Below, in pieces: positions 5,820-60,897 of a DNA stretch of 64,000 bases. Position 1 is the stretch's first letter. Each line of letters begins with the position of its first letter. Source of the DNA: Scyliorhinus canicula (lineage: Eukaryota); NCBI RefSeq assembly GCF_902713615.1, contig NC_052163.1, forward strand, positions 110,735,093-110,799,092. Reading direction: 5' to 3'. The notes under the pieces are model-generated. The model worked only from the letters and a program-made list of their open reading frames with translations. It was not told the DNA's origin and did no database searches. The position numbers were made by a program, and so were the translations under genes.

Positions 5820-6100
5820 TCCAAATATTTCTGTTTGCAGGTGGGATGGTTTCTGCTTCACCATTTCCTGCAGCAGGATTTTGCTCCGACAACTAACGAC
5901 ATTCCTCCTATTGCCTTTGTGGTCATTTTAAGGCAATCCCTTGTCACTTATTCCCCATCCAGAGAAAATGGTCTTTCCCAATCTGCCTCTCAAAACCTTT
6001 CTTAATATTGAGAACTCTGTTAAATCCCCTCCTGATAAAGCCTCCTCCCCCGCCAATGTGTAATATTGGCTAGTTTGCATTGACCACACTCTGTGCCCAG
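5820..6100 (-). mobile_element. Decayed CR1 LINE fragment
   Basis: ORF 5928-6122 contains GGDLTEFSILRKVL, resembling CR1 RGDLIEVFKIMKG. Confidence 0.5.
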
Positions 6101-6323
6101 TCCCAAACTGGACACAGCTCACAATCTGTCACTTCACCGGACCCTCGATAATTCTTTCCTTACTCATGCATTCTGTCTCTCCATTTATTCAGCTCAGAAT
6201 TGGGTTTGCCCTACTTTGATGGATTATCTTCCTGTATTTGGCTCTCAGGAAATTCCTGCTCTGAATCCCTCGGTTTCTCCTGATCCAAACCTTTCCACAC
6301 ATTTCCGTTCACTCCCATTCCAT

Positions 6324-7387
6324 TTAAACACGCTTTGCGGGTGCCATGGCCTTGGATACTGATGAGCTGTCTGTGTGAATAAGTGTTTTCTTGGACCCTG
6401 CGCCCTTTGTAACCTTACTAAGCCATCTTATACTTCTCACCTTGTCCCTGAACTCATCCGAGATGTAATAGTAAATGAAGGGGTCGATGCAGTTATTGAA
6501 GGTGCTCAGCACCAGGCAGAGCATGTAGAATAAATACAGCTCACTGCTATCCCACAGCCGATACTCGGAGTGATGGATGAGCAGGATTATGTTACTGGGA
6601 GTGAAACAGACCAAATACACGATCAGCACCAATACCATGGCTCTTATGGCTTTCGCATATTTGTCATCATTGATCATCAGCTTTTTGATTATGGACACAT
6701 AGCAGAATATAGTAACAAAACAAGGAATAAGGAACTCGAACACAACTAAACACACAAAGTAGTAAAAGAAATAACCGGACTGCAATTCTCTTGGCAAAAC
6801 GTCGTGGCAGGTGGTGACGTTCAGGTCCTGGATCAGGTATGTCTGCTGCTGGGTGAGAAACGGTATCATGGAGGCTGTGACAATCAACCAGATCAACAAA
6901 CAACAACAAACAGCAAACCCATTGTCCCTGAAGCGCCTGGAGAGGAATGGACGCACCAGAGCGAAGTATCTGTCGATGCTGATGAAGGTGAGCAGCAGGA
7001 TGGAGCAGTACATGTTCCCATAGAAGAAGGCGGTCATCGCCCGACAGAGACCCTCGCCAAAGAGCCAGTCGTTGCCCAGGAGGTGGTAGGAGATCTTGAA
7101 CGGCAGCACCAGGATCAGCAGAAGGTCGGCGGCAGCCAGGTTGATCAGGAAGATGGTGGATGGCAACCGCTGGACCTTAGTGATGAGATTGTACACAGCC
7201 ATCCCATTGGTTGGAAGGCCAATGACAAAGATGATGATATAAAGGGCAGGGGTCAGGGCTGTGGTGATGCTGCTGGTTAGGTGATACTTTCCTGATTCGT
7301 TTAAAACGTACTTTTGATTGTTTGACACCTTTGTTGGAATAGGATCAAGGGCTAAACCTCTTCCAAGTTCAATTTGTCCTGAGAACT
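6324..7387 (-). CDS. F2RL3: Proteinase-activated receptor 4-like GPCR, gene A, exon 2 (spliced product 381 aa)
   Basis: 7TM with RLPSTIFLINLAAADLL, DRY, ECL2 TCHDVLP, DPFIYYY and EFRDKVR, closest to PAR4 among PARs by my recall. Acceptor tttctttttgtctgtatag|AG is phase 1 (alternative AG would start the exon at 7378). Stop at 6324-6326. Orthology needs phylogeny. Confidence 0.9.
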
Positions 7388-7542
7388 CTATACAGACAAA
7401 AAGAAACTGAAACATTAGAATCACCGGTTGCTATGTTTAATACTCCCCAATCTTTTCAATGACAATTTCCTGCTCCGTTCCTTTGCTCAGATCTTTCATA
7501 TGTCTCAAGTCTCTTTCACCATGTGCCCAAGTAGCTAAGGGC

Positions 7543-8350
7543 CTGTAAAGTTAGGCCAGATACAGAATTGGACAATCTAACTTAGGCAGCAGCCAACAGT
7601 TGAGCAGCCAGGCCTGATGGGAATTCGGACAGGCCATGTTTAAACACAGACAGTGGCCAGAGGCAAGCCTGGGCAAGCCTGGACTTGTCCTGGAAGCTGG
7701 GTCTCGACCTTGGTCAAATAAGGACATTGTTTTGTGTATCTGCCAGCATCGTCCAGATTCACTGGCGGCTCAGTTACCACATATGGAAATATGGAAAGGG
7801 CTACAAACACTCTGGGTACCTAAGGATGGACACCCAGGGTGCTCCTGGCATCTTCCATATAAACAATCGGCAATCCTATTGGATGTTGCCCCTGCCCCCC
7901 ACACACACACACAAACACACACATATCCCGGTAGCCTAATTGGCTGGAAGCCAGATAATCTTCCAGAAAGCCCTGAGAAAGAGGGAAGGGTGTATAAGAA
8001 GAGAGACCTGAAGGCCACCCCCAACCAAGACTCCACCAACCTGTAAAGACACGGCGACAGCGGAAGAGGGTATGTGAGGCCAACCCTTGCGAAGAAGACC
8101 CTGAGTTCTGACCCGGAATGGGCAAGCTCAGCAAAGACATGGAGTATCCAGCAAAGGAACCTGGCCAAACTCAACTGCACGGGTAGTATCAGAGTCAGAC
8201 TTGCTGATGAGTGAGATTGGGGCAGAGGCTGAGGTTTCTCTACTGATACAGAGACAGTGCTGAGCTCATCGCCATGGGAAACCCAGCCATGGGTCAGAGT
8301 GGCAAACCACATCTACAGATTCTCCAACAATCATGACTGGGATTGTAGAA
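7543..8350. mobile_element. Possible LTR-like repeat in gene A intron
   Basis: Begins tgtaaagttagg and has TATA-like gtataag at about 7992; no defined right end or TSD. Confidence 0.3.
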
Positions 8351-9469
8351 TCTACACCCACACTCCCTCTACACTGTCCCCATCAAACACTGACAGGAAA
8401 GTACAGCACGGGGTTAAAAATAGAGTAAATCTCCCTTTACACTGTACCCATCAAAGACTCCCAGCACAGATACAGCACAGGGTTAGATACAGAGTAAAGC
8501 TCCCTCTACACTGTCCCCATCAAACACTCCCAGGACAGATACAGCACAGGGTTAGATACAGAGTAAAGCTCCCTCTACGCTGTCCCCATCAAACACTCCC
8601 AGGACAGGTACAGCACGGGGTTAGATACAGAGTAAAGCTCCCTCTACACTGTCCCCATCAAACACTCCCAGGACAGGTACAGCACGGGGTTAGATACAGA
8701 GTAAAGCTCCCTCTACACTGTCCCCATCAAACACTGCCAGGACAGGTACAGCACGGGGTTAGATACAGAGCAAAGCTCCCTACACACTGTCCCCATCAAA
8801 CACTCCCAGGACAGGTACAGCACGGGGTTAGATACAGAGTAAAGCTCCCTCTATACTGTCCACATCAAACACTCCCAGGACAAGTACAGCACGGGGTTAG
8901 AAACAGAGTAAAGCTCCCTCTACACTGTCCCCATCAAACACTCCCAGGACAGGTACAGCACGGGCTTTGATACAGAGTAAAGCTCCCTCCACACTGTCCC
9001 AATCAAACACTCCCAGGACAGGTACTGCACGGGGTTAGAAACAGAGTAAAGCTCCCTCTACACTGTCCCCATCAAACACTCCCAGGACAGGTACAGCACG
9101 GGGTTAGAAACAGAGTAAAGCTCCCTCTACACTGTCCCCATCAAACACTCCCAGGACAGGTACAGCACGGGCTTAGATACAGAGTAAAGCTCCCTCTACA
9201 CTGTCCCAATCAAACACTCCCAGGATAGATACAGCACGGGGTTAGATACAGAGTAAAGCTCCCTCTACACTGTCCCAATCAAACACTCCCAGGACAGGTA
9301 CTGCACGGGGTTAGATACAGAGTAAAGCTCCCTCTACACTGTCCCCATCAAACACTCCCAGGATAGATACAGCACGGGGTTAGATACAGAGTAAAGCTCC
9401 CTACACACTGTCCCCATCAAACACTCCCAGGACAGATACAGCCCGGGGTTAGATACAGAGTAAAGCTAA

Positions 9470-9698
9470 CTTTACAGTCTGGAGCGCATTGCCTGGGAGG
9501 GTGGTAGAGGCGGGTCACCTCACATCCTTTAAAAAGTACCTGAATGAGAACTTGGCATGTCTTAACATTAAGGGCTATGGGCCAAGTGCTGGCAATGGGA
9601 TTAGGAATGGCAGATCAGGTGCATTTCATGTGGCGGTGCAGCAGACTCGATGGGCTGAAGAGCCTTTTCTGCACTGTATTTTTCTTTAATTCTGTGAA
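9470..9698 (+). mobile_element. CR1 LINE 3' fragment inserted in the satellite
   Basis: Peptide LPGRVVEAGHLTSFKKYLNE...KGYG followed by the tail gggctgaagagccttttctgcactgta. Confidence 0.8.
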
Positions 9699-10727
9699 CT
9701 CTACACTGCCCCATCAAACATTCCCAGGACAGGTACAGCACAGGCTTAGATACAGAGTAATGCCAAATATACATGGTCCCGATCAAACACTCCCAGGAAA
9801 GGTACAGCATGGGGTTAGATACAGAGTAAAGCTCCCTCTACACTGTCCCCATCAAACACTCCCAAGACAGGTACAGCACAGGGTTAGATACAGAGTAAAG
9901 CTCCCTCTACACTGTCCCCATCAAACACTCCCAAGACAGTTACAGCACAGGGTTAGATACAGAGTAAAGCTCCCTCTACACTGTCCCCGTCAAACACTCC
10001 CAGGGTAGGTACGGCACGGGGTTAGATACAGAGTAAAGCTCCCTCTACACTGTCCCCATCAAACACTCCCAGGACAGGTACAGCACGGGCTTAGATACAG
10101 AGTAAAGCTCCCTCTACACTGTCCCCATCAAACACTCCCAGGACATGTACAGCACGGGGTTAGATACAGAGTAAAGCTCTCTCTACACTGTCCCCATCAA
10201 ACACTCCCAGGGCAGGTACAGCACGGCTTAGATACAGAGTAAAGCTCCCTCTACACTGTCCCCATCAAACACTCCCAGGACAGGTACAGCACGGGCTTAG
10301 ATACAGAGTAAAGCTCCCTCTACACTGTCCCCATCAAACACTCCCAGGACATGTACAGCACGGGGTTAGATACAAAGTAAAGCTCCCTCTACACTGTCCC
10401 CATCAAACACTCCCAGGACATGTACAGCACGGGGTTAGATACAGAGTAAAGCTCCCTCTACACTGTCCCCATCAAACACTCCCAGGACATGTACAGCACG
10501 GGGTTAGATACAGAGTAAAGCTTCCTCTACACTGTCCCCATCAAACACTCCCAGGACAGGTACAGCACGGGCTTAGATACAGAGTAAAGCTCCCTCTACA
10601 CTGTCCCCATCAAACACTCCCAGGACATGTACAGCACGGGGTTAGATACAGAGTAAAGCTCTCTCTACACTGTCCCCATCAAACACTCCCAGGGCAGGTA
10701 CAGCACGGCTTAGATACAGAGTAAAGC

Positions 10728-11044
10728 CAGCGCCGGCCCTAGGGTTGCTGGTGCCCCGGGCAAGATGAACTTCGGCGCCCTTGGGGGGGGGGGCGGGGCC
10801 GAGGGGGGGGGGCGGACCCGAGGGGGGGGGCGGGAGGGGCGGACCCGAGGGGGGGCGGGGGGGGACCGAGCCGGGGGGGGGGGGGGTGGACCGGGGGGGG
10901 CCGCCCTGGTGGAGGGCGGCCACCGCGCATGCGCTGGTTGGCACCGGCCCAACTGCGCATGCGCGGGACCCGAGTCTCTGGCGCCCCCTAGCACATGGCG
11001 CCCCGGGCGACTGCCCGAGTTGCTGGTGCCTTGAGCCGGCCCTG
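10728..11044. mobile_element. Non-autonomous hAT-type DNA transposon (MITE), 317 bp
   Basis: TIRs cagcgccggc / gccggccctg and exact 8-bp TSD agtaaagc at 10720-10727 and 11045-11052. Confidence 0.9.
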
Positions 11045-11442: not shown

Positions 11443-11524
11443 CTTCCTCTGAGTGACAGAGATCTGCAGATGAGAGCAGGATGGCTGAGACAGCGAGAAC
11501 GTTCAATGTTCGAGTCAGGTCCAT
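11443..11524 (-). CDS. F2RL3: PAR4-like gene A, exon 1 (signal peptide MDLTRTLNVLAVSAILLSSADLCHSEE)
   Basis: ATG in gcaacgATGG context, 27 codons + 1 nt, hydrophobic core, and donor AAG|gtaaga in phase 1 matching exon 2. PAR genes are typically two-exon. Confidence 0.85.
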
Positions 11525-13274: not shown

Positions 13275-13605
13275 TGAGTGCGTGTGACGGGTAAGTGTGA
13301 AGTTGTGGAATAGGTAAGTGTGAGGGTATGTAATAGGTAAGTGTGAGAATGTGTTTTGTTCAGCATGAGAGTGTGTAATGGGTAAATATGCGAGTGTGTA
13401 ATAGGTAAGTGCGAGTTGTTTATTTGTTCAGTGTGAGTGCGTATAATGAGTAAGCATGAGATTGTGTTTGATAAGTGTGAGAGTGTGTAATTGTTTAGTG
13501 TGAGACTGTGCATTGCATAAGTGTGAGGCTGTGTAATGCATAAGTGTGAGGGCACACAATGGGTATAAGTGAGTTTATGTAATGGAAAAGTGTGAGGGTG
13601 TGCAA
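13275..13605. repeat. Degenerate short-period repeat (gtgtgtaatgggtaagtgtga); also present at 12240-12312
   Basis: The same motif lies on both sides of the CR1 insertion. Confidence 0.7.
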
Positions 13606-13610
13606 TAAAT

Positions 13611-14028
13611 ACACCGCTTCACTGTGACGCTGACAGTGAGGACACCGTTCCCAGACTGCTTCACTGTGACGTTGACAGCAAGGACACAGTTCCCAGACTG
13701 CTTCACTGTGATGCTGACAGTGAGGACACCGTTCCCAGTCTGCTTCACTGTGACGCTGACAGTGAGGACACCGTTCCCAGACTGCTTCACTGTGACGTTG
13801 ACAGCAAGGACACTGTTCCCAGACTGCTTCACTGTGACACTGACAGCAAGGACACCGTTCCCAGTCTGCTTCACTGTGACACTGACAGCAAGGACACCAT
13901 TCCCAGACTGCTTCACTGTAATGCTGACAGCAAGGACACCATTCCCAGACTGCTTCACTGTAATGCTGACAGCAAGGACACCGTTACCAGACTGCTTCAC
14001 TGTAAAGCGGACAGCGAGGACACCATTC
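13611..14028. repeat. 42-bp minisatellite (ccgttcccagactgcttcactgtgacgctgacagcaaggaca), about 10 copies
   Basis: Direct tandem copies with 14-aa periodic ORFs. Confidence 0.95.
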
Positions 14029-14054
14029 TAAATCCACTTCAGTGTGACATTGAT

Positions 14055-15095
14055 CAGGTCTTGCTGCATTTGGAATGGATTACTTCAGTGTCTGGGGAGT
14101 CGCGGGTGGTGCTGAACTTCTGTGAACATCCCCACTTCTGACCTTACGTTGGAAGGGAGGTCATTGATGAAGTAGCTGAAAATGGCTGGGCCTAGCACAC
14201 AATCCTTAGGAACACCCGCAGTGATATCTTGGAGCTGAAACGATTGACCTCCAACCATCTTCCTTTGTACCAAGTATGATTCCAACCAGCAGAAGGTATT
14301 CCCCCTGGTTCCCATTGCTAGGGCTCGTTGATGCCACACTCTGTCAAATGCTGCCTTGAAGTCAGTGTCAGTCACTCGCACCTCATTCAGCTCTTTTGTC
14401 CCAAGGCTATAATGAGCTAAGTGACCCTGGCCGAACCCAAACTGAGCATCAGTGAGCAAGTTATGGCTCAGCAAGTGCAAGATAACACCACTGATGTCCC
14501 ATTCCATCACTTTGCCAATGATCGAAGGTAGACTGATGGGGCGGTAATTGGCCGGGTTGACTTTGTCCTGCTTTTTGTGTATAGAACATAACTGGACAAT
14601 TTTCCACATTGGTGGATGGCAGTGTTGTCACTGTACTGCGGCAGTTTGGCTGGGCGTGTGGCAAGACCTGGAGCACAAGTCTTCAGTACTATTGCCAGAA
14701 TATTGTCAGGGCCCATAGCCTTTGCAGTATGCAGTGCCTTTAGCCATTCCTTGATATCATGTGGATTGAATCAAATTGCCTGAAGACTGACATCTGTGAT
14801 GCTGCGGACCTCCGGAGGACGAAATGGATCATCCACTCGGCACTTCTAGCTGAAGATTGTTGCAAATATTTCAGCTTGATCTTTTGCGCTGATGTGCTGG
14901 GCTCCTTCATTATTGAGGATGGGGATATTTGTGGAGCCTCCCCGTCCGTTGGGTTGTCTAATTGTTCACCACCATTCATGACTGGCTGAGGCAGGACTGC
15001 AGAGTTTAGGCCTGATCAGTTGGTTGTGGGATCACTTCGCCCTGTCTGTCACCTGCTGCTTACGATTCTTGGCACACAAGGAGCCCTGCCTACCT
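14055..15095 (-). mobile_element. Decayed CR1-type LINE reverse transcriptase fragment
   Basis: Frameshifted motifs GPDNI, NPANYRPISL, QFGF, FKAAFDRVWH and GVP..VLGP..F..FINDLP. Confidence 0.88.
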
Positions 15096-25223: not shown

Positions 25224-28200
25224 TGTGATGAATGGTATCGGTAACTGCTGTAACTGTACCTTGCCTTTAATACATTGGCCCTTTAAGACCGGGCTTGGAA
25301 CCCTGGGGGACTCCGCCTCTGGCTCCACCCCCAGGAAACAGTATATAAGGTGATGCTCACTGGGCAGCGTGCTGTGACCACACTTCTCGGCAGCTGTCCG
25401 GTTCTCTGGTAATTAAAGCCTTTGAATTACCAATCGTCTCTCCTGTGTCGTAATTGAGGGTATCTCAATTTAATTACCAGACACATCAAGATGGACAGCG
25501 CTCTAAAGCCGGAGAAACTCAACCTAGACGCTCGGTCGCCGGAGGCCCCAGAAATTTTTTTATATTGGCTCCGGTGTTTTGAGGCCTATCTAAACTCCTC
25601 AGAGACTGAAGTCGACGGCGCTCGCAAGCTGAGCTTACTACATGCCCGGGTTGGCCACCGACTCTCCTCTGTGATCGAGAACACTACAACATACGAAACT
25701 GAGGTCGATATACTAAAGAAACGTTTCATAAAGCCGATTAACGAGGTACAAGCCAGACATTTGCTCTCGACCTGCAGCCAGCGCTCCGGGGAAACTAGAC
25801 GAATACGTGGAGAGACTCACTGCGCTCGCGAGGAACTGCAATCATAAAGAAGTGACGGCAGAAGTCCACATGAACTTACATATTCATGATACCTTCGTGT
25901 CCGGTATCAGGTCCTCGTACATCCGGCAGCGGCTCCTAGAAGACGGGGCAAAGGATCTCCAAGGCATGGTAACGCTCGCCTCTTCTCCAGAAACGGCCCA
26001 CCTTAACCTCCGTACGTACTCCGTGCGAACCCCTCTCGATCCCCTCCAGACTCGGCCACGCTACAGGCCTGCACCGCGCGGTGATCCGCTCACTCAGGGG
26101 GTTCCCCATGCTATTTCTGTGGGCAAGGCCAGCACCCACGTCAGCGTTGCCCGGCCCGCTCCGCGATCTGCAACGACTGCGGGAAGAAGGGGCACTTCGC
26201 TAAAGTCTGCCTGGCTAGGCCCAAAGGCCGCAAACAAAAGCCTCACAAAGGCCCAGAAATCAAGCTCCCGGCCTCACAGGCCCTGCAACGTGGCCGCGTG
26301 ACGGCCGGACACGCCTACTTCCGCCGCGTCATCGAGTTATGGGGGTGGCCATCTTGGCAGCGGCCATCTTCGAATCCTGACACGTGTGACCGATGGCGGC
26401 GGCCATTTTGTGACTCCAGGCAGCCATTTTTTAAGTCCGACTTAACCGAGGACTCTGACTACCCGCAACTAGGAGCGATCACGCTCGATCAATCGCGGCC
26501 AAAGCACCTGCGGAACTCAATGATGCGGATACAAATCAACGGCCACGACACTCCCTGCATATTTGACTCCGGGAGCACGGAGAGCTTTATTCATCCAGAC
26601 ACGGTAGTGCTCCCTGCGCACCCACCCCGCCTCCCAAACTATCGCCTTCGCTTCATGGTCCCATTCGGTACAAATCACGGGGTATTGTGTCGCGGACCTC
26701 GCGATTCAAGGCACTGAATACACCCGTTTTAAACTCTACATCCTCCCTTATCTCTGTCCTCCCCTGCTGCTCGGTCTGGACTTTCAGTGCAGCCACCGGA
26801 GCCTGACACTGAAGTTCGGCGGACCCCTGCCCCCACTCACTGTATGTGCCTGGCGACACTCAGTTGCGCCACCCCCCCTCTTCGCGAACCTCACTCCCGA
26901 CTGTAAGCCCGTCTCCACCAGGAGTCGGCGGTACAGTGCCCAAGACATGACTTTTATCAAGTCAGAGGTTCAGCGGCTACTAAAAGAGGGGGTCATAGAG
27001 GCCAGCAACAGCCCTTGGAGGACTCAAGTATTGGTAGTCTGCTCCGGGGAAAAACAACGAATGGTAGTGGATTATAGCCAGACCATAAACCTCTTTACGC
27101 AACTTGATGCTTACCCACTTCCCCGTATAGCAGAAATGGTGACTCCAATCGCCCAGTATAGGGTATTCTCGGTACAACCTGGCTAGCCATCCTCGGCTAC
27201 GTCATGGAAAACGGGGTCCTAGGCCCAGACCCCGACCGCATGCGTCCCCTTAAGGAACTCCCCCTTCCCCGTAGCCTCAAGGCACTCAAACGGTGCTTGG
27301 GGCTTTTCTCCTATTACGCCCAGTGGGTCCCCAGATATGCGGACAAAGCCCGGCCACTCATTAAGACCACGGTTTTTCCCCTGACGGCTGAGGCCCAGTC
27401 GGCTTTCGACCGTATCAAGGCCGGCATCATCAAGGCCGCCATGCACGCGGTGGACGAAGCCATTCCCTTCCAGGTAGAAAGCGACACATCCGATGTCGCC
27501 CTGGCTGCTACCCTCAACCAGGCGGGCAGACCGGTAGCGTTCTTCTCCCGAACCCTCACCGCCTCGGAAATTCGGCACTCTGCAGTCGAGAAGGAAGCAC
27601 AAGCCATAGTGGAAGCCGTGCGACACTGGAGGCACTACCTAGCTGGTAGGAGGTTCACCCTCATCACCGACCAACGGTCGGTCACCTTTATGTTCGATAA
27701 CGCATAACGGGGCAAAATAAAGAACGACAAAATTCTGAGGTGGAGGATAGAGCTCTCCACCTGTACGTACAATATTAAATATCGCCCGGGGAAGCTCAAC
27801 GAGCCCCCGGATGCCCTGTCCCGCGGCACGTGCGCCAACGCGCAAAAAGACCGCCTAAGAGCCATCCACGATGACCTCTGCCACCCAGGGGTCACCCGGC
27901 TTGCCCATTTCATCAAGTCCCGCAACCTACCCTACTTCACAGGAGAGGTCAAGGCTATGACTAAGGCATGCCAGATCTGTGCGGAGTGCAAATATTCACA
28001 GCGACCGGGGTACATCATTCATGAGCGATGAGCTGTGTCGATATCTGCTCAGCAAGGGCATCGCCTCGAGCAGGACGACGAGCTATAACACGCAGGGAAA
28101 TGGTCAGGTGGAGAGGGAGAACGCGACAGTTTGGAAGGCTGTCCTCCTAGCCCTACGATCAAGGAGTCTCCCTATCGCCCGCTGGCAGGAGGTCCTACCC

Positions 28201-29092
28201 AATGCCCTACACTCCATTAGGTCGCTCCTCTGTACGGCCACGAACGAGACCCCTCACAATCGTTTGTTTGTCTTCCCCAGGAAGTCCACCTCTGGGGTCT
28301 TGCTTCCACGTTGGCTGACGACTCCGGGACCAGTCCTACTCCGGAGGCACGTGAGGAGCCATAAAACGGATCCAATAGTCGAGAGGGTCCAATTGCTACA
28401 CGCAAACCCTCAATACGCACACGTCGAGCACCCCGACGGCAGGCAGGATACTGTCTCCCTGCGAGACCTGGCACCCGCCGGCTTCCCCACCGACCCCCCC
28501 CCCCCCACCCCTCCTACCGACGCTCCCCTCCCCACACCAACTGCCGACCCCGACAGCGCCCCCCCCTCCCATAGCGCCCCCTTCCCCCCAGCCGGCGCCA
28601 GCATCAATCACCCTAGTCACCCCGGATACCCCCGCCGCCCCGCTCCAAAGCGGGCAAAGGCTCAATCAACCTTGCTCCCGGATATACCATCACCGAAACC
28701 GACTGTATCCACGGCACCACCACCGGAGCGGAGAAGGTCAGCACGGACGGTCAGACCACCCAAAAGACTGAACTTATAACTCCACTTTCACCCCTGACAG
28801 ACTATGTGTTTTTTTTTAAACAGGGGGTGAATGTGATGAATGGTGAATGTGATGAATGGTATCGGTAACTGCTGTAACTGTACCTTGCCTTTAATACATT
28901 GGCCCTTTAAGACCGGGCTTGGAACCCTGGGGGACTCCACCTCTGGCTCCGCCCCCAGGAAACAGTATATAAGGTGATGCTCACTGGGCAGCGTGCTGTG
29001 ACCACACTTCTCGGCAGCTGTCCAGTTCTCTGGGTGATTAAAGCCTTTGAATTACCAACCTTCCCTCCTGTGTCGTAATTGAGGGTATCTCA
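25224..29092 (+). mobile_element. Gypsy LTR retrotransposon 1, defective (RT core and part of integrase deleted)
   Basis: LTRs 25224-25467 and 28848-29092 (TG..CA), exact 5-bp TSD ctcga, gag from 25491, protease FDSGS, RT start SPW..DAYPLP, RNase H, integrase remnant, and PPT cagggggtga at 28821-28830. Confidence 0.97.
25491..28779 (+). pseudogene. gag-pol pseudogene of Gypsy element 1
   Basis: Frameshifted ORFs 25491-25847, 25807-26301, 26298-26717, 26947-27186, 27204-27707 and 27979-28779, homologous to element 2. Confidence 0.9.
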
Positions 29093-30727: not shown

Positions 30728-31737
30728 TCAGGAGGAACAGGTCAGGCCAAACTGCTGCGTTCTTTTTCCTGAATCTCCGTCGTTCTCTGCCGTGCAAAAA
30801 ATCGTGCTCCTCACCTTGTCCCTGAACTCATCCGAGATGTAATAGTAAATGAAGGGGTCGATGCAGTTATTGAAGGTGGTCAGCACCAGGCAGAGCATGT
30901 AGAATAAATACAGCTCACTGCTGTCCCACAGCCGATACTCCGAGTGATGGATGAGCAGGATTATGTTACTGGGAGTGAAACAGACCAAATACACGATCAG
31001 CACCAATACCATGGCTCTTATGGCTTTCGCATATTTGCCATTATTGATCATCAGCTTTTTGATTATGGACACGTAGCAGAATAGAGTAACAAAACACGGA
31101 ATAAGGAACTCAAACACGACTAAACACACAAAGTAGTAAAAGAAATAACCGGACTGCAATTCTCTTGGCAAAACGTCGTGGCAGGTGGTGACGTTCAGGT
31201 CCTGGATCAGGTATGTCTGCTGCTGGGTGACAAACGGTATCATGGAGGCTGTGACAATCAACCAGATCAACAAACAACAACAAACAGCAAACCCATTGTC
31301 CCTGAAGCGCTTGGAGAGGAATGGACGCACCAGAGCGAAGTATCTGTCGATGCTGATGAAGGTGAGCATCAGGATGGAGCAGTACATGTTCCCGTAGAAG
31401 AAGGCGGTCATCGCCCGACAGAGACCCTCGCCAAAGAGCCAGTCGTTGCCCAGGAGATGGTAGGAGATCTTGAACGGCAGCACCAGGATCAGGAGAAGGT
31501 CGGCGACGGCCAGGTTGATCAGGAAGATGGTGGATGGCAACCGCTGGACCTTGGTGGCCAAGACTACAAGAGCCATCCCATTGGCTGGGAGCCCAATGAT
31601 CAGGATGATGCTGTAAATGGCGGGAATCATCACCGTGACAACAGAACTGGTCAGCTGACTCTTTGTTGATTCATTCAGCTGATTATCGGAACCAGTTTTC
31701 AAAAGGGGGAAACTTCTCCCAATGAATTTTGAGGGAT
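30728..31737 (-). CDS. F2RL3: Proteinase-activated receptor 4-like GPCR, gene B, exon 2 (spliced product 362 aa)
   Basis: Intact 7TM ORF with the same PAR4-like motifs as gene A; acceptor ctaatgatctatttttgcacag|AT is phase 1; candidate cleavage site FIGR/SFPLLK. Confidence 0.92.
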
Positions 31738-31891
31738 CTGTGCAAAAATAGATCATTAGTGTTAGCATTTCAGCTCTTAGCTCAATTTGTAAAAATTACA
31801 AGTAGAAGAGTGGAACTCAGAATACTGGTGGTAAATTGATCATTTTAGTAACTACGACAATCGGTTTTTCAATGCTTAAGATGTATGAGCA

Positions 31892-36594: not shown

Positions 36595-36673
36595 CTTGTT
36601 TCAACTGGCAGAGTGCAGTGGTTGAGAATATAAGTGCAAATAAAACAAACCTTTGGCAGTATGTAATGGCCAT
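36595..36673 (-). CDS. F2RL3: PAR4-like gene B, exon 1 (signal peptide MAITYCQRFVLFALIFSTTALCQLKQ)
   Basis: ATG in acagctATGG context, 26 codons + 1 nt, hydrophobic core, and donor AAG|gtaaga in phase 1 matching exon 2. Confidence 0.85.
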
Positions 36674-38043: not shown

Positions 38044-41000
38044 CTATAAAGTCAGTCTGTCCGGCGGTCGAATTGTCCGCTGAGATCTGCAGAGCACCGG
38101 GGTTGCAGCCTCTTGCGGTGGCTGGATGGGTGTTGTGTGCTGGGGTACGATGACGGACTCCAGGGAGGGTTGTATCCGAGCTTCATACTCTCCTGGTTCG
38201 ACCGGGGACTGGGGACGCTGGGGGCTGGCCGGCGCGGGTGCGCGGAACTGGTGGAGCGAGCATGCGGGCTCGGGAGCGTGAGGGGGCGGCAGCATGGGGT
38301 GTAGGGTGAGAGGTCCTTCTGTAGGGGTAGAGGGGGCGCTGGATCCGGCGGGTGCTAGATCCCGGAGGGATACAGTGTCCTGACAGCTGTCAGGGAACTC
38401 GACGAATGCGTACTGGGGGTTGGAGTGGAGCAGGCGCACCTTCTCAACAAGGGGGTCGGTTTTGTGCGCCCTGACGTGTTTTCTCAGGAGTACGGGGCCC
38501 GGCGTCCTCAGCCATGCCAGAAGTGAGACCCCCGTGGTAGTGACCCTGGAAAAAATGAAGAGCCTCTCGTGAGGGGTCTGGTTGGTCGCCGTACACAAAA
38601 GGGACCTAATAGCGTGGAGCGCGTCTGGGAGGACTTCCTGCCACTGGGAGACTTGGAGCTTTCTAGACCGTAGGGTCAGTAGGACGGTCTTCCAGACCGT
38701 CGCGTTCTCCTTTTCCACCTGCCCGTTCCCCCTGGGGTTGTAGCTGGTAGTCCTGCTCAAGGCGATGCCCTTGTCGAGCAGGTACTGACACAGCTCGTCG
38801 CTCATGAAGGACGAACCCCAGTCGCTGTGTACGTAGTTGGGGAAACCAATCAGGGTGAAGATGCTATACAGGGCCCTAATGACTGTGTGGGAGGTCATGT
38901 CGGGGCACGGGATAGCGAATGGAAAACGGGAGAACTCGTCTACGACGTTTAAGAAGTAAACATTCTTGTTAGTTGAGGGGAGTGGCCCTTTGAAATCAAT
39001 CGCGAGGCGTTCAAAGGGCCAAGAAGCCTTGACCAGGTGGGCCCTGTCTGGTCTATAGAAGTGCGCCTTGCACTCCGCACAGATTGGGCAGTCCCTGGTG
39101 ACCGCTTTTACTTCCTCGTTGGAGAAAGGCAGGTTTCGGGCCCTGATGTAGTGGCCGAGCCGGGTGACCCCTGGGTGGCAGAGGTCATTGTGGATGCTTT
39201 TTAATCGGTCGATCTGCACGCTGGCGCATGTCCCGAGGGATAGGGCATCCGGAGGCTCGTTGAGCTTCCCGGGTCGATATTTGATATCGTAATTGTAGAC
39301 GGAGAGTTCGATCCTCCACCTCAGAATTTTATCGTTTTTTATTTTGCCCCTTTGCGAGTTGTCGAACATGAAGGCAACCGATCTTTGGTTTGGTGATGAG
39401 GGTGAACCTCCTACCTGCGAGGTAGTGCCTCCAGTGACGGATAGCCTCCACAATGGCTTGTGCTTCTTTCTCGACTGAAGAGTGTCGGAGTTCTGAAGCG
39501 GATAGGGTACGGGAGAAAAATGCAACGGGTCTCCCTGCCTGATTTAAAGTGGCTGCTAGAGCTACCTCTGAGGCGTCGTTCTCTACCTGAAATGGAGTGG
39601 ATTCATCCACCGCCCGCATGGCCGCTTTGGCAATGTCCTCCTTGATGCCGTCGAAGGCCTGGCGTGCCTCGGCTGACAGGGGAAATCGTGTGGCCCTAAA
39701 GAGTGGGCGGGCTTTGTCCGCATTTTGAGGGACCCACTGGGCGTAGTAGGAAAAAAATCCCAAGCACCGTTTGAGGGCCTTGGGACAATGAGGGGGAGGG
39801 AGTTCTAAGAGGGTCCGGGTCGGGGCTCAGGACTCCGTTTTCCACGACGTAGCCGAGGATGGCTAGTCTGGATGTGCGGAAAACGCATTTTTCCTTGTTG
39901 TACGTGAGGTTCAGTTTCTGTGCCGTCTGGAGAAAACGGTGGAGGTTGGCGTCGTGGTCCTGCTGGTCATAGCCGCAGATGGTGACATTGTCCAAGTACG
40001 GAAACGTAGCCCGCAGCCCGTACTGGTCCACCATTCGGTCCATTGCTCATTGGAACACCGAGACCCCATTAGTGATGCTGAAAGGGACCCGGAGGAAATG
40101 GAAGAGCCGGCCATCGGTCTCGAATGCCGTGTAGTGGCGGTCCTCCGGGCGGATTGGGAGCTGGTGGTATGCAGACTTCAGATCCACTGTGGAAAAGAGC
40201 CGGTATTGGGCGATCTGGTTTACCATGTCTGCAATCCTGGGGAGGGGATATGTGTCGAGGAGCGTAAATCTATTTATTGTCTGACTGTAGTCGACCACCA
40301 TACGGAATTTTTCCCCAGTCTTGACGACCACCACCTGAGCTCTCCAGGGACTATTGCTGGCCTCTATAACCACCTCACTGAGTAGCCTTCGGACCTCTGC
40401 TCTGACAAATACCCTATCCTGCAGGCTGTATCGCCGGCTACGAGTGGCTACGGGTTTACAGTCCTTAGTGAGATTGGCAAAGAGAGGAGGGGGGGGGGGA
40501 ATTCGCAGCGTAGCGAGGCTACAGATCGTGAGTGGGGGCAGGGGCCCTCCGAAGCTGAGGGTGAGGCTCTTGAGGTTGCATTGGAAGTCTAGGCCTAATA
40601 AGAGTGGCGCGCAGAGTTCGGGCAAAACGTAGAGTTTGAACTTCGAGTAACTAGCGCCTCAGATTGTGTGTCGCGGCGGTGCGCCCCTGGATCTGGACCG
40701 AATGGGAGCCTGAAGCGAGCGCGATAGTTTGCTGCGCGGGGAAAACGGGGAGCGAACAGCGTCTTACCAGGTCTGGTTGTATGAAGATCTCTGTGCTCCC
40801 GGAGTTGAAGAGGCGTGGCGTACTGTACCCGTTGATATGGACCTCTGCCATCGGGTTTTGTAGATTCTTTGGTCGTGATTGGTCCAGGGTAACTGCGCTG
40901 AGATGCGGGTAGTCGGCGGCTCGATCAGCTGTGCTGGAGTGGCCCCATGTTGACTGCCCTCTGAGTTCATAGTCTAGTTCGAATTCCTCCGCTGAGTTGT

Positions 41001-46241: not shown

Positions 46242-47463
46242 TTGCGCTTCCATTATCAATACAACATCATGTACAGCGCAGGGCAGGACAATGCAAATAT
46301 GGACGCAGTGAGTTGTCTCCCGCTCCCAGATTTGCTTTCCAAGACGTTGTGTCCTCCCATGTCAATTTTCTTACTCAAGGCACTGGCACAGACTCAAGTA
46401 AGTGCAAAGCAGGTTAAGCAATGGATGGACAGAGATCTTAATCTGTCGCAAGTGAAAATATTTCTGATGCCAGGATGGCCAACGACCCTGGACGATGATG
46501 AGTTGAAACTTATGTGAAGGGTAGGGGTGAGTTAAGTGTCCAGGATGTGGGGACAAGATTGGCGATCCATTCCTGGTCATTCACAAGTCATGGAGGAAAT
46601 TAATGAGGTTCATCCAGGTGCTTCCAAAATCTCGCCAGGTCGTATGTTTAGTGGCCTAATATGGATCTGGACTTGGGAAAACAAGGTGAAATCCTGTTTG
46701 GCATGTCATATAAATCAGAGGTTGGCGTCACCAGCGCCGCTTCATCCTTTGGAGTGGCCTAATGGGCTGTGAACAAAATGTGAATTTTGCAGGACCTTTA
46801 ATGAACCACATGTTTTTGATTGTCGCAGATGTGCATTTGAAATGGTTGGAAACACTTATGTTGAGAGTAATATCACAGCTCCTGTGACAATTGAGAAGCT
46901 ACTTCAAATAGTTTCAACTCATGGTCTACCAGATTCGCTTGTGCCAAATAACGGCACTACGTTTACAAGCGAATTATTTCAAGAAATTCATGCCATGTGC
47001 GTTTCATCCAGCTTCGAATTTCTTGGTGGAGCTGGCTGTTCAAACTTTAAGTTGGGATTGAAGAGAAAGCTTTGAGCACAAAGCTCTCAAAAGTTTTATG
47101 CCAGGAGCGCGTCGCGGCACAATCCACACCCGGGCGCTCTTCCTGGGGAATTGTTGTTCAGTTGAAGGCTGAAATCTCGTCTGGATCTGTTTAATCCAGA
47201 TCTCAGGGCAAAAGTGAGGAGGAGACAAGAGAAGCAGAGGGAGGGGCTGGCCTAGCAGGCCAAAGCAAGGCAGCTCAAACCGGATGACCAGGTTGACATG
47301 AGCAACTTTGGTCACAACCAGAGGTGGTTACCAGTTACCGGGAACAATTTTAAATCTTGGATGGTGAGACTGCAACACGGAGGAGTTGTTCACAGACACC
47401 AAGACAGTATTCGTTTACGTTGTGACTCAGTCATGAAACGTTTCAGAGTCAGCAGCCTTTACA

Positions 47464-47722
47464 GATAACATGGCAGAGGGTAATGCTGCCATGATAACAT
47501 GGCAGAGGGTAATGCTGCCATGATAACATGGCAGATGGTAATGCTGCCATGATAACATGGCAGAGGGTAATGCTGCCATGATAACATGGCAGAGGGTAAT
47601 GCTGCCATGATAACATGGCAGATGGTAATGCTGCCATGATAACATGGCAGAGGGTAATGCTGCCATGATAACATGGCAGAGGGTAATGCTGCCATGATAA
47701 CATGGCAGAGGGTAATGCTGCC
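47464..47722. repeat. 29-bp minisatellite (gataacatggcagagggtaatgctgccat) x9 with an internal inverted repeat
   Basis: Near-perfect copies; catggcag/ctgccatg 8-bp stem per unit. Confidence 0.95.
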
Positions 47723-48018
47723 GTGGGTGTTCACCAGGAAGTGGTCCCTGTGTTTCCACGTTTGCTGGCTGACTCTGCTGGTGGAGTGGAAGAGGAACGT
47801 TCACGTTCAGCTTCTCAATCTACCTCTTCACCCAAGATTCCGGATCAACCAATTCTGTGCTGTATTTCTCTATATCTCTATATCTATATCTCTATAACCG
47901 TTACAATTTCACCAGTGGTATTGCGTAGGTCACAATGCAATCACAAAGCTCCTGACAGACCTCTGTATAGTTAAGACAAACCTTTGTTATATTCTGTCCC
48001 GAGGAGATATTGAAATTT

Positions 48019-58879: not shown

Positions 58880-59427
58880 AGGGCAATACGGTCTCCTTAA
58901 CTGAGAAAGGACGTACTGGTGCTGGAGGGTGTGCAGAGGAGATTCACTAGGTTCATCCCAGAACTGAAGGGGTTGGATTACGAGGAGAGGTTGAGTTGAC
59001 TGGGACTGTACTCGTTGGAATTTAGAAGGATGAGGGGGGGATCTTATAGAAACATTTAAAATTATGAAGGGAATAGATAGGATAGATGCGGGCAGGTTGT
59101 TTCCACTGGCGGGTGAAAGCAGAACTAGGGGACATAGCCTCAAAATAAGGGGAAGTAGATTTAGGACTGAGTTTAGGAGGAACTTCTTCACCTAAAGGGC
59201 TGTGAATCTATGGAATTCCTTGCCCAGTGAAGGCTCCTTCATTAAATGTTTTTAAGGTAAAGATAGATAGTTTTTTGAAGAATAAAGGGATTAAGGGTTA
59301 TGGTGTTCGGGCCGGAAAGTGGAGCTGAGTCCACAAGAGATCAGCCATGATCTCATTGAATGGCGGAGCAGGCTCGAGGGGCCAGATGGCCTACTCCTGC
59401 TCCTAATTCTTATGTTCTTATGTTCTA
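58880..59427 (+). mobile_element. CR1 LINE 3' fragment
   Basis: LEGVQRRFTRFIPELKGLDYEERL..DLIETFKIMKGIDRID; tail (ttcttatg)n. Confidence 0.93.
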
Positions 59428-59454
59428 AGGTCCATCAAGTATCTGACAATGTAC

Positions 59455-60743
59455 ATCGCTGTCAGAGGGTCAGGACTGAGGGAGTGCCGCACTGTCAGAG
59501 GGTCAGTACTGAGGGAGTGCCGCACTGTCAGAGGGTCAGTACTGAGGGAGTGCTGCACGGTCAGAGGGTCAGTACTAAGGGAGTGATGCACTGTCAGAGG
59601 GTCAGTACTGAGTGAGTGATGCACTGTCAGAAGGTCAGTACTGAGAGAGTGCTGCACTGTCAGAGGGTCAGTACTGAAGGAGCGCTGCACTGTCAGAGGG
59701 TCAGTACTGAGGGAGTGCAGCACTGTCAGAGGGTCAGTACTGAGGGAGTGCTACACTGTTAGAGGGTCAGTACTGAGGGAGTGCTGCACTGTAAGAGGGT
59801 CAGTACTGAGGGTGTGCTGCACTGACAGAGGGTCAGTACTGAGGGAGTGCTGCACTGTCAGAGGGTCAGTACTAAGGGAGTGCTGCACTGTCAGAGGGTC
59901 AGTACTAAGGGAGTGCTGCACTGCCAGAGGGTCAGTACTGAGGGAGTGCCGCACTGTCAGAGGGTCAGTACTGAGAGAGTGCTGCACTGTCAGAGGGTCA
60001 GTACTAAGGGAGTGCTGCACTGCCAGAGGGTCAGTACTGAGGGAGTGCCGCACTGTCAGAGGGTCAGTACTGAGAGAGTGCTGCACTGTCAGAGGGTCAG
60101 TACTAAGGGAGTGCCGCACTGTCAGAGGGTCAGTACTGAGGGAGTGCTGCACTGTCAGAGGGTCAGTACTGAGGGTGTGCTGCACTGTCAGAGGGTCAGT
60201 ACTGAGGGTGTGCTGCACTGTCAGAGGGTCAGTACTGAGAGAGTGCTGCACTGTCAGAGGGTCAGTACTGAGGGAGTGCCGCACTGTCAGAGGGTCAGTA
60301 CTGAGGGAGTGCTGCACTGTCAGAGGGTCAGCACTGAGGGAGTGCTGCACTGTCAGAGGGTCAGTACTGAGGGAGTGCTGCACTATCAGAGGGTCAGTAC
60401 TGAGAGAGTGCTGCACTGTCAGAGGGTCAGTACTGAGAGAGTGATGCACTGTCAGGGGGTCAGTACTGAGAGAGTGCTGCACTGTCAGAGGGTCAGTACT
60501 GAGAGAGTGATGCACTGTCAGAGGGTCAGTACTGAGAGAGTGCTGCACTGTCAGAGGGTCAGTACTGAGAGAGTGATGCACTGTCAGAGGGTCAGTACTG
60601 AGAGAGTGCTGCACTGTCAGAGGGTCAGTACTGAGTGAGTGATGCACTGTCAGAGGGTCAGTACTGAGAGAGTGCTGCGCTGTCAGAGGGTCAGTACTGA
60701 AGGAGCGCTGCACTGTCAGAGGGTCAGTACCGAGAGAGTGCTG
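59455..60743. repeat. 33-bp minisatellite (cagtactgagggagtgctgcactgtcagagggt), about 39 copies
   Basis: Regular tandem copies with 11-aa periodic ORFs. Confidence 0.97.
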
Positions 60744-60759
60744 TTAGAATTGCAATTGT

Positions 60760-60897
60760 CCAATGGCACTATTTCAAAGAGGAACAGGAGGCCAGTTTTT
60801 CCTCTGAATCCTGCAGCCAATGTTGATTCCAAAACCAACATCACTGAAGAATTATCTGGTCATTATCACATATCTGTTTGCGGGATCTTTTGGGATG
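60760..60897 (+). mobile_element. Deu-domain SINE (SacSINE1/AmnSINE-like) remnant
   Basis: atggcactatttcaaagag..ccaacatcactg..attatctggtcattatcacat..tgtttgcggga matches the Deu-SINE body as I recall it. Confidence 0.65.

What the first reader, a model, noticed from the sequence alone, without database searches (positions are those of the whole stretch)
6436..7178. Tandem PAR4-like paralogs share a sharply bounded, near-identical core: probable gene conversion
Seen: 6436-7178 aligns ungapped to 30810-31552 (offset 24374) with 18 mismatches in 743 bp by hand count (about 97.6%), including synonymous sites. Identity drops abruptly in TM1 and just after EFRDKVR. Exon 1, the N-terminal ectodomain, C-tails, introns and flanks show little or no similarity. 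Inference: an old duplication whose TM2-TM7 core is homogenised by interlocus conversion, while the protease-sensing N-terminus and regulatory C-tail stay distinct. This would give one signalling core with two inputs.
Basis: partly seen in the sequence, partly recalled or inferred. Interest (0 to 1): 0.8.

Follow-up and report, generated by a model that had tools for sequence, protein, structure and literature searches.

The report
Gene conversion between shark PAR paralogs
Two neighbouring protease-activated receptor genes of the small-spotted catshark keep copying their seven-helix signalling core onto each other while their protease-sensing heads and regulatory tails stay different, and the same has happened independently in several other shark lineages.

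Summary
Window 6436-7178 and 30810-31552 differ at 18 of 743 bases. Maximum-likelihood breakpoints fall at 6433-6437 and 7174-7182. Nothing else in the two gene regions aligns except dispersed repeats.

The genes are two intact, two-exon, minus-strand PAR4-like receptors of Scyliorhinus canicula: A (XP_038634194.1) and B (XP_038634147.1).

- **dS:** 0.063 in the core, against 0.85-1.26 in the flanking coding sequence of the same exon.
- **Trees (37 elasmobranch proteins):** the core (ICL1 to helix 8) clusters by species in sharks. The termini cluster by paralog, with an A-type clade that includes rays. AU tests reject the opposite grouping in both partitions.
- **Direction:** ICL3 and ECL2 motifs indicate A→B in Scyliorhinus and B→A in Carcharodon.
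- **Extent:** rays, and a third shark paralog, share only a smaller TM2-TM3 block.
- **GC3:** it rises with homogenisation, from about 0.5 to 0.67 to 0.86.
- **Assembly:** independent RNA and DNA runs reproduce the flank-core junctions, show both genes in spliced-RNA runs, and give about twofold DNA depth on the core.

It is a new, unusually long-lived example of a known process.

The parts
6436..7178 (-). Homogenised core in gene A (residues 98-345 of XP_038634194.1: ICL1, TM2-TM7, helix 8 up to EFRDKVR)
   Evidence: 18/743 mismatches to 30810-31552. ML breakpoints 6433-6437 and 7174-7182. dS 0.063, dN 0.014.
30810..31552 (-). Homogenised core in gene B (XP_038634147.1), the partner copy
   Evidence: The B tail sequence 30780-30809 is found joined to the core in contigs from runs X1 and X7, and a one-base variant of it in X19.
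6945..7178 (-). Nested TM2-TM3 block (residues 98-175) that is also homogenised with at least one further paralog outside the window, and among ray paralogs
   Evidence: DNA depth is 11-31 here, against 8.3 for the rest of the core and about 5 for unique flanks. Loose ends at 7164, 6899 and 6454 translate to C-type paralog peptides. The ray block tree loses paralog structure. GC3 is 0.86-0.87.
7179..7250 (-). TM1 of gene A: still alignable to B (31553-31624) but at old divergence
   Evidence: Identity 0.58-0.8 in 50-bp windows. dS 0.85, dN 0.31.
6324..7387 (-). Gene A exon 2 (coding, stop included): ectodomain with LGR|GLALDP site, 7TM, 36-residue Ser-rich tail
   Evidence: ORF. The GT..AG splice model translates exactly to P0001. 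The exon1-exon2 junction is seen in spliced contigs of X1, X7 and X19.
11443..11524 (-). Gene A exon 1 coding part (signal peptide)
   Evidence: tblastn 100 %. Splice model. The loose end at 7389 equals 11445-11474.
30728..31737 (-). Gene B exon 2 (coding, stop included): ectodomain with IGR|SFPLLK site, 7TM, short Cys-containing tail
   Evidence: ORF. The GT..AG splice model translates exactly to P0004.
36595..36673 (-). Gene B exon 1 coding part (signal peptide)
   Evidence: tblastn 100 %. Splice model.
6324..6435 (-). Gene A C-tail, paralog-specific (B counterpart 30728-30809)
   Evidence: Mismatch rate 0.68 at the same offset. The tail is 81 % identical to the S. torazame A tail but only 26 % to the S. 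canicula B tail.

Best explanation
Genes A and B are ancient tandem paralogs of a PAR4-like protease-activated receptor. The duplication predates the shark-ray split. Their ICL1-to-helix-8 core is repeatedly overwritten by non-crossover interlocus (ectopic) gene conversion, that is, homology-directed repair that uses the neighbouring copy 24.4 kb away as template. Tracts start and end inside the stretch that is still similar. The diverged ectodomain/TM1 on one side and the C-tail on the other therefore act as self-reinforcing barriers, possibly helped by selection for distinct cleavage sites, tethered ligands and tails. The present 743-bp block in S. canicula is the sum of several tracts of different age: about 2.4 % divergence overall, runs of up to 112 identical bases, and a cluster of 8 differences in 6664-6744. 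At ECL2 and ICL3 the catshark B gene now carries A-type sequence. Shown: the mosaic, the dS drop, the incongruent trees, the recurrence in other sharks, and the transcription of both genes. Inferred: the repair mechanism, the cause of the boundaries, and any functional benefit.
For: 18/743 mismatches with sharp ML breakpoints. No other homology between the loci. Core dS 0.063 against 0.85-1.26 in the flanking codons of the same exon, Fisher p 3e-12. Core tree: the four Scyliorhinus rows cluster at 100/99, the Carcharodon pair at 99/85, the Stegostoma pair at 100/96, Chiloscyllium plus Hemiscyllium at 100/100, and the Heptranchias pair at 91/78. Termini tree: an A-type clade at 96/92 containing shark A genes, a ray clade and a chimaera gene. 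AU tests: an A-type clade on core data is rejected (p 1e-6; sharks only 1e-85). Species pairs on termini data are rejected (5e-6, 9e-74, 2e-57, 0.002). Within-species A/B identity in sharks is 32-56 % for the N-terminus, 92-98 % for the core and 23-43 % for the tail; in rays the core is only 69-74 %. Between S. canicula and S. torazame, 3 core sites group by species, 2 by paralog and 0 crosswise, against 55 by paralog and 0 by species in the termini. ICL3/ECL2 motifs show A→B in Scyliorhinus, B→A in Carcharodon, and both kept in Heptranchias. GC3 is 0.86 in the TM2-TM3 block, 0.67 in the rest of the core and 0.45-0.56 in non-core coding, as GC-biased conversion predicts. Independent runs reproduce the junctions, and DNA depth is about 2x in the core.
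Against: DNA of other species could not be fetched. The cross-species evidence is therefore protein-level only and rests on Gnomon models, although ectodomain, core and tail lie in one exon, so model chimeras are unlikely. Logan contigs collapse A and B in the core, so the phase of the 18 differences in other individuals is unknown. At 7020 and 7134 all four runs read the B letter. Higher GC3 could partly reflect the codon usage of helices. Tandem adjacency in other species is known only as 'same chromosome-scale contig'.
Confidence: 0.88

Rival explanations
1. A single, fairly recent replacement event in the Scyliorhinus lineage only (one conversion or one patch duplication), not a long-running process.
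For: The window alone shows one block with about 2.4 % divergence. That is similar to the roughly 2 % divergence of A-specific sequence between S. canicula and the related species in run X19 (16 substitutions in about 750 bases).
Against: The same core-by-species pattern is present in Carcharodon, Heptranchias, Stegostoma and the hemiscylliids, with different tract limits and opposite direction. Three core sites group by species between the two Scyliorhinus species. The mismatch spacing is heterogeneous.
Confidence: 0.06
2. Extreme purifying selection (or convergent evolution) on the core, with no sequence exchange.
For: The TM2-TM3 block is very conserved across the whole family.
Against: Synonymous sites are homogenised as well (dS 0.063). 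Orthologous cores differ by 17-29 % between shark species while the paralogs within a species differ by 2-8 %. Species-specific residues are shared by both paralogs.
Confidence: 0.02
3. Assembly, collapse or polishing artefact that copied one core onto the other.
For: Near-identical paralogs 24 kb apart are a known risk for consensus polishing. Short-read contigs do collapse them.
Against: 18 differences remain. Contigs from runs of four different studies join A's tail and A's ectodomain to the core, and three of them (the RNA-type runs) join B's tail to it; the DNA run X5 showed no piece over 7173-7306. DNA depth in an independent 2024 run is 8.3 on the core against 4.6-5.7 on the flanks. The S. 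torazame gene models, from a separate assembly, show the same mosaic.
Confidence: 0.02
4. Unequal crossing-over and birth-and-death: repeated loss and re-duplication with chimeric genes, rather than non-crossover conversion.
For: Tandem same-strand paralogs can recombine unequally. The family is expanded in cartilaginous fishes.
Against: A single crossover yields one breakpoint and changes copy number. Here both flanks of both genes are retained, with an internal patch replaced, in every species examined. Introns and intergenic DNA are unrelated.
Confidence: 0.02

Closest known systems
CCR2/CCR5 gene conversion in mammals (e.g. bats, PMC8877049)
   Same: Both are tandem class-A GPCR paralogs. 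Both show multiple independent conversion events in different lineages and in either direction. In both, converted segments cluster by species, and the N-terminus is never part of a tract.
   Different: Here the tract covers nearly the whole 7TM bundle with the same two boundaries in most sharks, and the C-tail is also spared. The receptor's 'ligand' is part of its own unconverted N-terminus. The paralogs predate the shark-ray split, so they are much older than the mammalian cases.
Long-lived concerted evolution of gene pairs BMP8A/B, DDX19A/B, TUBG1/2 (PMC2720389)
   Same: Exactly two old paralogs, with specific segments homogenised for very long periods in multiple distant lineages.
   Different: Those pairs were defined with intron homogenisation as a criterion. 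In the shark PAR pair only coding sequence inside one exon is homogenised and the introns are unrelated. The time depth is probably greater (general knowledge of elasmobranch divergence times, not tested here).
Vertebrate protease-activated receptors PAR1-4 (F2R, F2RL1-3; PMC4771116)
   Same: Two-exon genes with the signal peptide in exon 1, an N-terminal Arg cleavage site followed by a tethered ligand, and the CHD motif in ECL2. The best solved-structure matches are PAR2, PAR4 and PAR1. The nearest named non-chondrichthyan proteins are PAR4.
   Different: NCBI names the two genes 'PAR3-like' and 'PAR2-like'. Cartilaginous fishes carry a multi-gene PAR4-like expansion that the 2016 family survey did not sample. 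That paper does not mention conversion.

Membership tests
Protease-activated receptor (PAR) family | Rhodopsin-type 7TM receptor | tested here: met
   Pfam 7tm_1, E 3e-49 (A) and 3e-50 (B).
Protease-activated receptor (PAR) family | Closest characterised or solved relatives are PARs, clearly ahead of other GPCR families | tested here: met
   PDB: PAR2 8e-81, PAR4 1e-76, PAR1 1e-70; the next family is P2Y8 at 4e-55.
Protease-activated receptor (PAR) family | Signal peptide, then an exodomain with a basic P1 cleavage site that unmasks a tethered ligand | tested here: inconclusive
   A conserved G-R column precedes variable hexapeptides in all A/B orthologs: LGR|GLALDP in A, IGR|SFPLLK in B, NPR|GYPL in Pristiophorus. 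Cleavage and self-activation cannot be tested in silico.
Protease-activated receptor (PAR) family | Two-exon gene with the signal peptide in exon 1 and the rest in exon 2 | tested here: met
   GT..AG models reproduce both RefSeq proteins exactly. The spliced junction is seen for A. PMC4771116 states that most PAR genes have 2 exons.
PAR4 (F2RL3) orthology group | Nearest named relatives outside cartilaginous fishes are PAR4 | tested here: met
   All non-chondrichthyan hits in the top 120 that carry a PAR subtype name are PAR4 or PAR4-like, at 48-56 % identity. The top named Atlas clusters are PAR4-like and PAR4, with F2RL1 only at rank 7.
PAR4 (F2RL3) orthology group | Monophyly with PAR4 in a tree that includes PAR1-3, and conserved synteny | not tested
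   No PAR1-3 sequences were retrieved. Against human structures, PAR2 (275 bits) and PAR4 (262 bits) score similarly.
Interlocus gene conversion / concerted evolution | Within the tract, paralogs are more alike within a species than orthologs are between species | tested here: met
   Core tree and AU tests. Identities are 92-98 % within a species against 71-84 % between orthologs of different genera; the congeneric S. canicula/S. torazame orthologs are 96-97 %, no lower than the paralogs.
Interlocus gene conversion / concerted evolution | Flanking parts of the same genes keep the paralog phylogeny (an old duplication) | tested here: met
   Termini tree with an A-type clade at 96/92 that includes rays. 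AU tests reject species pairs.
Interlocus gene conversion / concerted evolution | Synonymous divergence collapses inside the tract, with sharp breakpoints | tested here: met
   dS 0.063 against 0.85-1.26. Breakpoints 6433-6437 and 7174-7182.
Interlocus gene conversion / concerted evolution | Non-reciprocal patch replacement with both loci and both flanks retained | tested here: met
   Both genes are intact. Introns, exon 1, tails and intergenic DNA are unrelated.
Interlocus gene conversion / concerted evolution | GC-biased signature in the converted sequence | tested here: inconclusive
   The GC3 gradient of 0.86, 0.67 and 0.45-0.56 fits. A control with unconverted ray orthologs at DNA level was not possible.

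The most novel reading that the evidence does not exclude
Homogenisation of the core is not just tolerated but maintained by selection across elasmobranchs for hundreds of millions of years. The two receptors would be kept with one identical ligand pocket and G-protein interface, for example because they act as heterodimers or co-receptors, or must share one downstream coupling. Selection would meanwhile keep distinct cleavage sites, tethered ligands and tails. That would make a modular 'two sensors, one engine' receptor system, with a nested TM2-TM3 module shared family-wide.
Probability: 0.25. Interest if true: 0.7.

Novelty: new member of a known kind. Interest (0 to 1): 0.55.

Why it matters
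**Concerted evolution.** Pairs that stay in concerted evolution for over 100 My are considered rare: three human pairs in PMC2720389. This pair appears to have been exchanging sequence in many shark lineages since before the crown sharks split. It has clean module boundaries, both directions of transfer, and a graded GC3 signature. That makes it a good natural system for studying tract limits, GC-biased conversion and the balance between homogenisation and subfunctionalisation.

**PAR biology.** The pair is a natural chimera experiment. Two different cleavage sites and tethered ligands (GLALDP... and SFPLLK...) and two different tails are attached to an almost identical 7TM core. ECL2, which in mammalian PARs is a main determinant of agonist specificity (general knowledge), is identical in A and B, and 8 residue differences remain elsewhere in the core.

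**Practical warning.** Whole-protein trees and automatic names ('PAR3-like', 'PAR2-like') for these shark genes are misleading, because different parts of the gene have different histories.

Tried and rejected
- **DNA from other species.** Fetching genomic DNA of the S. torazame A and B genes and an older S. torazame scaffold failed ('sample's file too large'). No nucleotide-level GENECONV, dS or tract mapping could therefore be done outside the window.
- **Polarising conversion along the whole core.** Using columns diagnostic for ray A against ray B paralogs gave only 2 usable columns. Direction was instead read from the ICL3 and ECL2 motifs.
- **Phasing the 18 A/B differences in other individuals.** Logan contigs are not reliable for this. 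With k=31 the two copies collapse, and single contigs mix A and B letters. I do not claim polymorphic tracts.
- **A splice donor at the 3' boundary.** I considered that AAG|GTGAGA after EFRDK might be a splice donor, which would make the boundary an exon edge. I rejected this: the read-through tail is in the RefSeq models and is conserved by paralog across species.
- **Literature.** Searches for PAR gene conversion or shark PARs found nothing specific.
- **Earlier scan notes.** They had nothing on this family elsewhere in the genome.
- **First run search.** The first attempt at look-up of sequencing runs failed because the machine was busy, and it was repeated.

Full report
**1. The observation**

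At a fixed offset of 24374 bases, window 6436-7178 and 30810-31552 differ at 18 of 743 positions (97.6 %). Identity in 50-bp windows is 0.92-1.0 inside the block. On the 3' side it reaches background (0.2-0.38) within 50 bp. On the TM1 side it passes through 0.74-0.8 and 0.58 before reaching background at about 7300.

A three-segment likelihood model places the breakpoints at exactly these coordinates. The 2-lnL support intervals are 6433-6437 and 7174-7182, and the likelihood ratio is 329 against one uniform rate.

Gapped blastn adds only the TM1 stretch up to 7250, at lower identity. Over about 10 kb around each gene the only other matches are about 200-bp dispersed repeats at about 71 %.

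**2. What the two sequences are**

Both lie on the minus strand inside long ORFs, 6324-7424 and 30728-31768. Both ORFs are rhodopsin-type receptors (Pfam 7tm_1).

The database search identifies them letter for letter as two RefSeq proteins of the small-spotted catshark, Scyliorhinus canicula:
- A = XP_038634194.1, 381 aa, named 'PAR3-like'.
- B = XP_038634147.1, 362 aa, named 'PAR2-like'.

Each gene has two coding exons with GT..AG introns in the same phase, and the models reproduce the RefSeq proteins exactly:
- A: 11524-11443 and 7387-6324.
- B: 36673-36595 and 31737-30728.

The best solved-structure matches are PAR2, PAR4 and PAR1 (E 8e-81 to 1e-70), far ahead of the next family, P2Y8, at 4e-55. 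All non-chondrichthyan proteins in the top 120 hits that carry a PAR subtype name are PAR4 or PAR4-like, at 48-56 % identity. The nearest named Atlas clusters are PAR4-like and PAR4. 'PAR4-like' is therefore the best label. Formal orthology, meaning a tree with PAR1-3 and synteny, was not tested.

Both proteins keep these features:
- a signal peptide;
- a conserved Gly-Arg site followed by different hexapeptides (A: LGR|GLALDP; B: IGR|SFPLLK);
- the TM3-ECL2 cysteines, the ECL2 CHD motif, DRY and DPxxY.

Assigning these as PAR hallmarks rests on general knowledge of the family.

**3. Synonymous divergence**

Nei-Gojobori estimates on the codon alignment of the single large exon:

| Segment | dS | dN |
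|---|---|---|
| Core (247 codons) | 0.063 | 0.014 |
| TM1 | 0.85 | 0.31 |
| Aligned ectodomain + TM1 | 1.26 | 0.35 |
| C-tail | saturated | 1.2 |

Synonymous differences are depleted in the core relative to the N-terminal flank, with Fisher p 3e-12. Amino-acid constraint therefore cannot explain the block.

**4. Cross-species test**

I aligned 33 elasmobranch and chimaera members of the A/B clade plus four outgroup paralogs. The alignment was split at the catshark breakpoints.

The core tree groups by species or lineage in sharks:
- the four Scyliorhinus sequences (two species, two paralogs each): 100/99;
- the Carcharodon pair: 99/85;
- the Stegostoma pair: 100/96;
- Chiloscyllium A with Hemiscyllium B: 100/100;
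- the Heptranchias pair: 91/78.

The termini tree groups by paralog. An A-type clade (96/92) holds all shark A genes, a six-species ray clade and a Callorhinchus gene. The B genes fall elsewhere.

AU tests reject the opposite grouping in both partitions:
- On core data, an A-type clade is rejected (p 1e-6; shark A genes only, 1e-85).
- On termini data, species groupings are rejected (Scyliorhinus 5e-6, Carcharodon 9e-74, Stegostoma 2e-57, Heptranchias 0.002).

Within-species A/B identity:

| Group | N-terminus | Core | Tail |
|---|---|---|---|
| Sharks | 32-56 % | 92-98 % | 23-43 % |
| Rays | 26-47 % | 69-74 % | 13-33 % |

Orthologous cores of different shark genera are only 71-84 % identical.

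Ectodomain, core and tail are all in one exon, so chimeric gene models are an unlikely source of this pattern. The duplication is therefore older than the shark-ray split. The core has been homogenised independently in at least five shark lineages.

**5. Recurrence, direction and mosaicism**

Between S. canicula and S. torazame, three core sites group by species (residues 176, 191, 303) and two by paralog (159 L/M, 178 R/K). None groups crosswise. The termini give 55 sites by paralog and none by species. Exchange has therefore continued around or after that speciation, without erasing every difference.

Motifs in ICL3 and ECL2 polarise events:
- Heptranchias keeps an A-type (KYAKA; LQSG) and a B-type (QFGQA; VDSG) version, matching ray A and ray B2.
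- Both Scyliorhinus genes carry the A-type at both places, indicating A→B.
- Both Carcharodon genes carry the B-type ICL3, indicating B→A, but keep distinct ECL2.

Block limits differ by lineage. In Heptranchias the block runs from residue 83 to 261. In the other sharks it runs from about 97-104 to 341-346.

Inside the catshark block the spacing of the 18 differences is uneven. There are 8 within 6664-6744, and runs of up to 112 identical bases. That is what overlapping tracts of different ages would leave.

**6. A nested, family-wide block**

In rays the segment for residues 97-175 (TM2-TM3) loses paralog structure. The three Narcine paralogs cluster, the two Pristis B genes cluster, and an A clade is rejected at p 0.0025. 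Residues 176-345 still sort by paralog.

In Scyliorhinus a third, more distant paralog (S. torazame P0030) shares the genus-specific CRAM and LVRPF residues of A and B.

The read data fit this:
- On window 6905-7172, DNA depth in an independent run is 11-31. It is 8.3 on the rest of the core and about 5 on unique flanks.
- Contigs that leave the alignment at 7164, 6899 and 6454 translate to third-paralog peptides (LWIMAAKSK, VIWVFAVLL, FRFKVRQVI).

The evidence for rays is weaker, because this block is highly conserved and has few variable sites.

**7. GC bias**

GC3 by segment:

| Segment | GC3 |
|---|---|
| TM2-TM3 block | 0.86-0.87 |
| Rest of the core | 0.66-0.68 |
| Non-core coding sequence of the same exon | 0.45-0.56 |

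Core against non-core gives Fisher p 2e-6 for A and 0.003 for B. The gradient follows the inferred frequency of conversion, as GC-biased gene conversion predicts. Without DNA of unconverted ray orthologs I cannot exclude a contribution from helix codon usage.

**8. Is it an assembly artefact?**

I laid Logan contigs of four runs from four studies on 5900-7900. X1, X7 and X19 contain spliced RNA. X5 is DNA from 2024. X19 is a close relative that matches S. torazame peptides.

- All four runs have contigs joining A's tail and 3' flank to the core (5900-6465).
- X1, X7 and X19 also join A's ectodomain to the core.
- The loose end at 7389 is exactly A's exon 1 (window 11445-11474).
- The loose end at 6436 in X1 and X7 is exactly B's tail (window 30780-30809).

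In these spliced-RNA runs A shows its splice junction and B's tail is joined to the core, so both genes appear to be transcribed; the run types are themselves guesses. The flank-core junctions exist in independent samples. The core has about twice the DNA depth of its flanks.

There is one limit. With k=31 the two cores collapse into single contigs that mix A and B letters, so phase cannot be read. At 7020 and 7134 all four runs show the B letter.

**9. Mechanism**

The pattern is an internal patch replaced, both flanks of both genes retained, copy number stable, and tracts of hundreds of bases. This is the signature of non-crossover ectopic gene conversion during homology-directed repair between same-strand neighbours 24.4 kb apart. 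It is not the signature of unequal crossing-over.

The boundaries coincide with the points where similarity collapses. Because conversion needs homology at both ends, diverged flanks are self-reinforcing barriers. Selection to keep different cleavage sites, tethered ligands and tails may sharpen them.

All of this paragraph is inference from established knowledge of recombination. It was not shown here.

**10. Function (inference)**

The homogenised part contains the whole ligand pocket (ECL2 and TM3/5/6/7) and the G-protein surface (ICL2, ICL3 and helix 8).

The unconverted parts are:
- the signal peptide;
- the cleavage site and tethered ligand;
- TM1;
- the tail. In A it is long and Ser-rich (TDSSSVS). 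In B it is short and contains Cys.

P2 is Gly in both catshark sites, as in PAR2-type trypsin or factor Xa sites, rather than Pro as in thrombin sites (general knowledge). The activating protease is unknown.

**11. Comparison with what is known, and novelty**

The closest analogue is CCR2/CCR5. That pair shows multiple independent conversions in either direction, species-wise clustering of converted segments, and an N-terminus that is never converted (PMC8877049).

Pairs homogenised for over 100 My are regarded as rare (PMC2720389). The 2016 survey of vertebrate PAR evolution contains neither sharks nor gene conversion (PMC4771116). My other searches found nothing on this.

This is therefore a new, well-resolved and unusually long-lived member of a known kind of process, not a new kind of system.

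**12. Verdict**

- Observation: confirmed.
- Confidence in recurrent interlocus conversion: 0.88.
- Interest: 0.55.

Noticed in passing
window 6905-7172 (and a paralog outside the window): A third PAR4-like paralog (ortholog of S. torazame P0030) shares the TM2-TM3 block with A and B. DNA depth is raised here, and contigs branch off at 7164, 6899 and 6454 into third-paralog sequence. It also carries the Scyliorhinus-specific residues CRAM and LVRPF.
   Followed up: partly
proteins P0007-P0040 (rays and skates), residues 97-175 in P0001 numbering: In rays only the TM2-TM3 block shows species-specific residues shared among the three paralogs, for example IFLTNLA in all three Narcine genes and NNWIFGE in the stingrays. 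Residues 176-345 sort by paralog.
   Followed up: partly
window 7020 and 7134: The reference A copy has A at both sites, but all four independent runs read G, the letter of copy B. This is either polymorphism, a recent micro-conversion, or a result of contig collapse.
   Followed up: no
window 8332-10790: A 69-bp minisatellite, more than 30 copies at 90-97 % identity in three blocks, fills much of intron 1 of gene A. Other arrays: 27-bp units at 1-2400, 42-bp at 13529-14116, 29-bp at 47406-47782, 33-bp at 59311-60900.
   Followed up: no
window 27255-28502 and 38324-39805: Inverted copies (73-79 %) of a retroelement flank gene B. The ORF at 38044-39525(-) has an integrase core domain (rve, E 6e-14). 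First-stage notes call these Gypsy elements. Short direct repeats lie at 25223-25409/28847-29033 and 37791-37898/42215-42322.
   Followed up: partly
protein P0013 (Pristiophorus japonicus B-type): Its predicted cleavage site is NPR|GYPL, with P2 Pro and a GYP tethered ligand, as in mammalian PAR4. The catshark genes have Gly at P2 (LGR|G, IGR|S). The head evolves freely between lineages.
   Followed up: no
window 6750-7000: In this roughly 250-bp stretch the two copies show no synonymous difference but three amino-acid differences (L/V at 6857, R/K at 6937, L/M at 6995). R/K and L/M are paralog-specific in both Scyliorhinus species. They may be differences kept by selection, but there are too few sites for a test.
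   Followed up: partly
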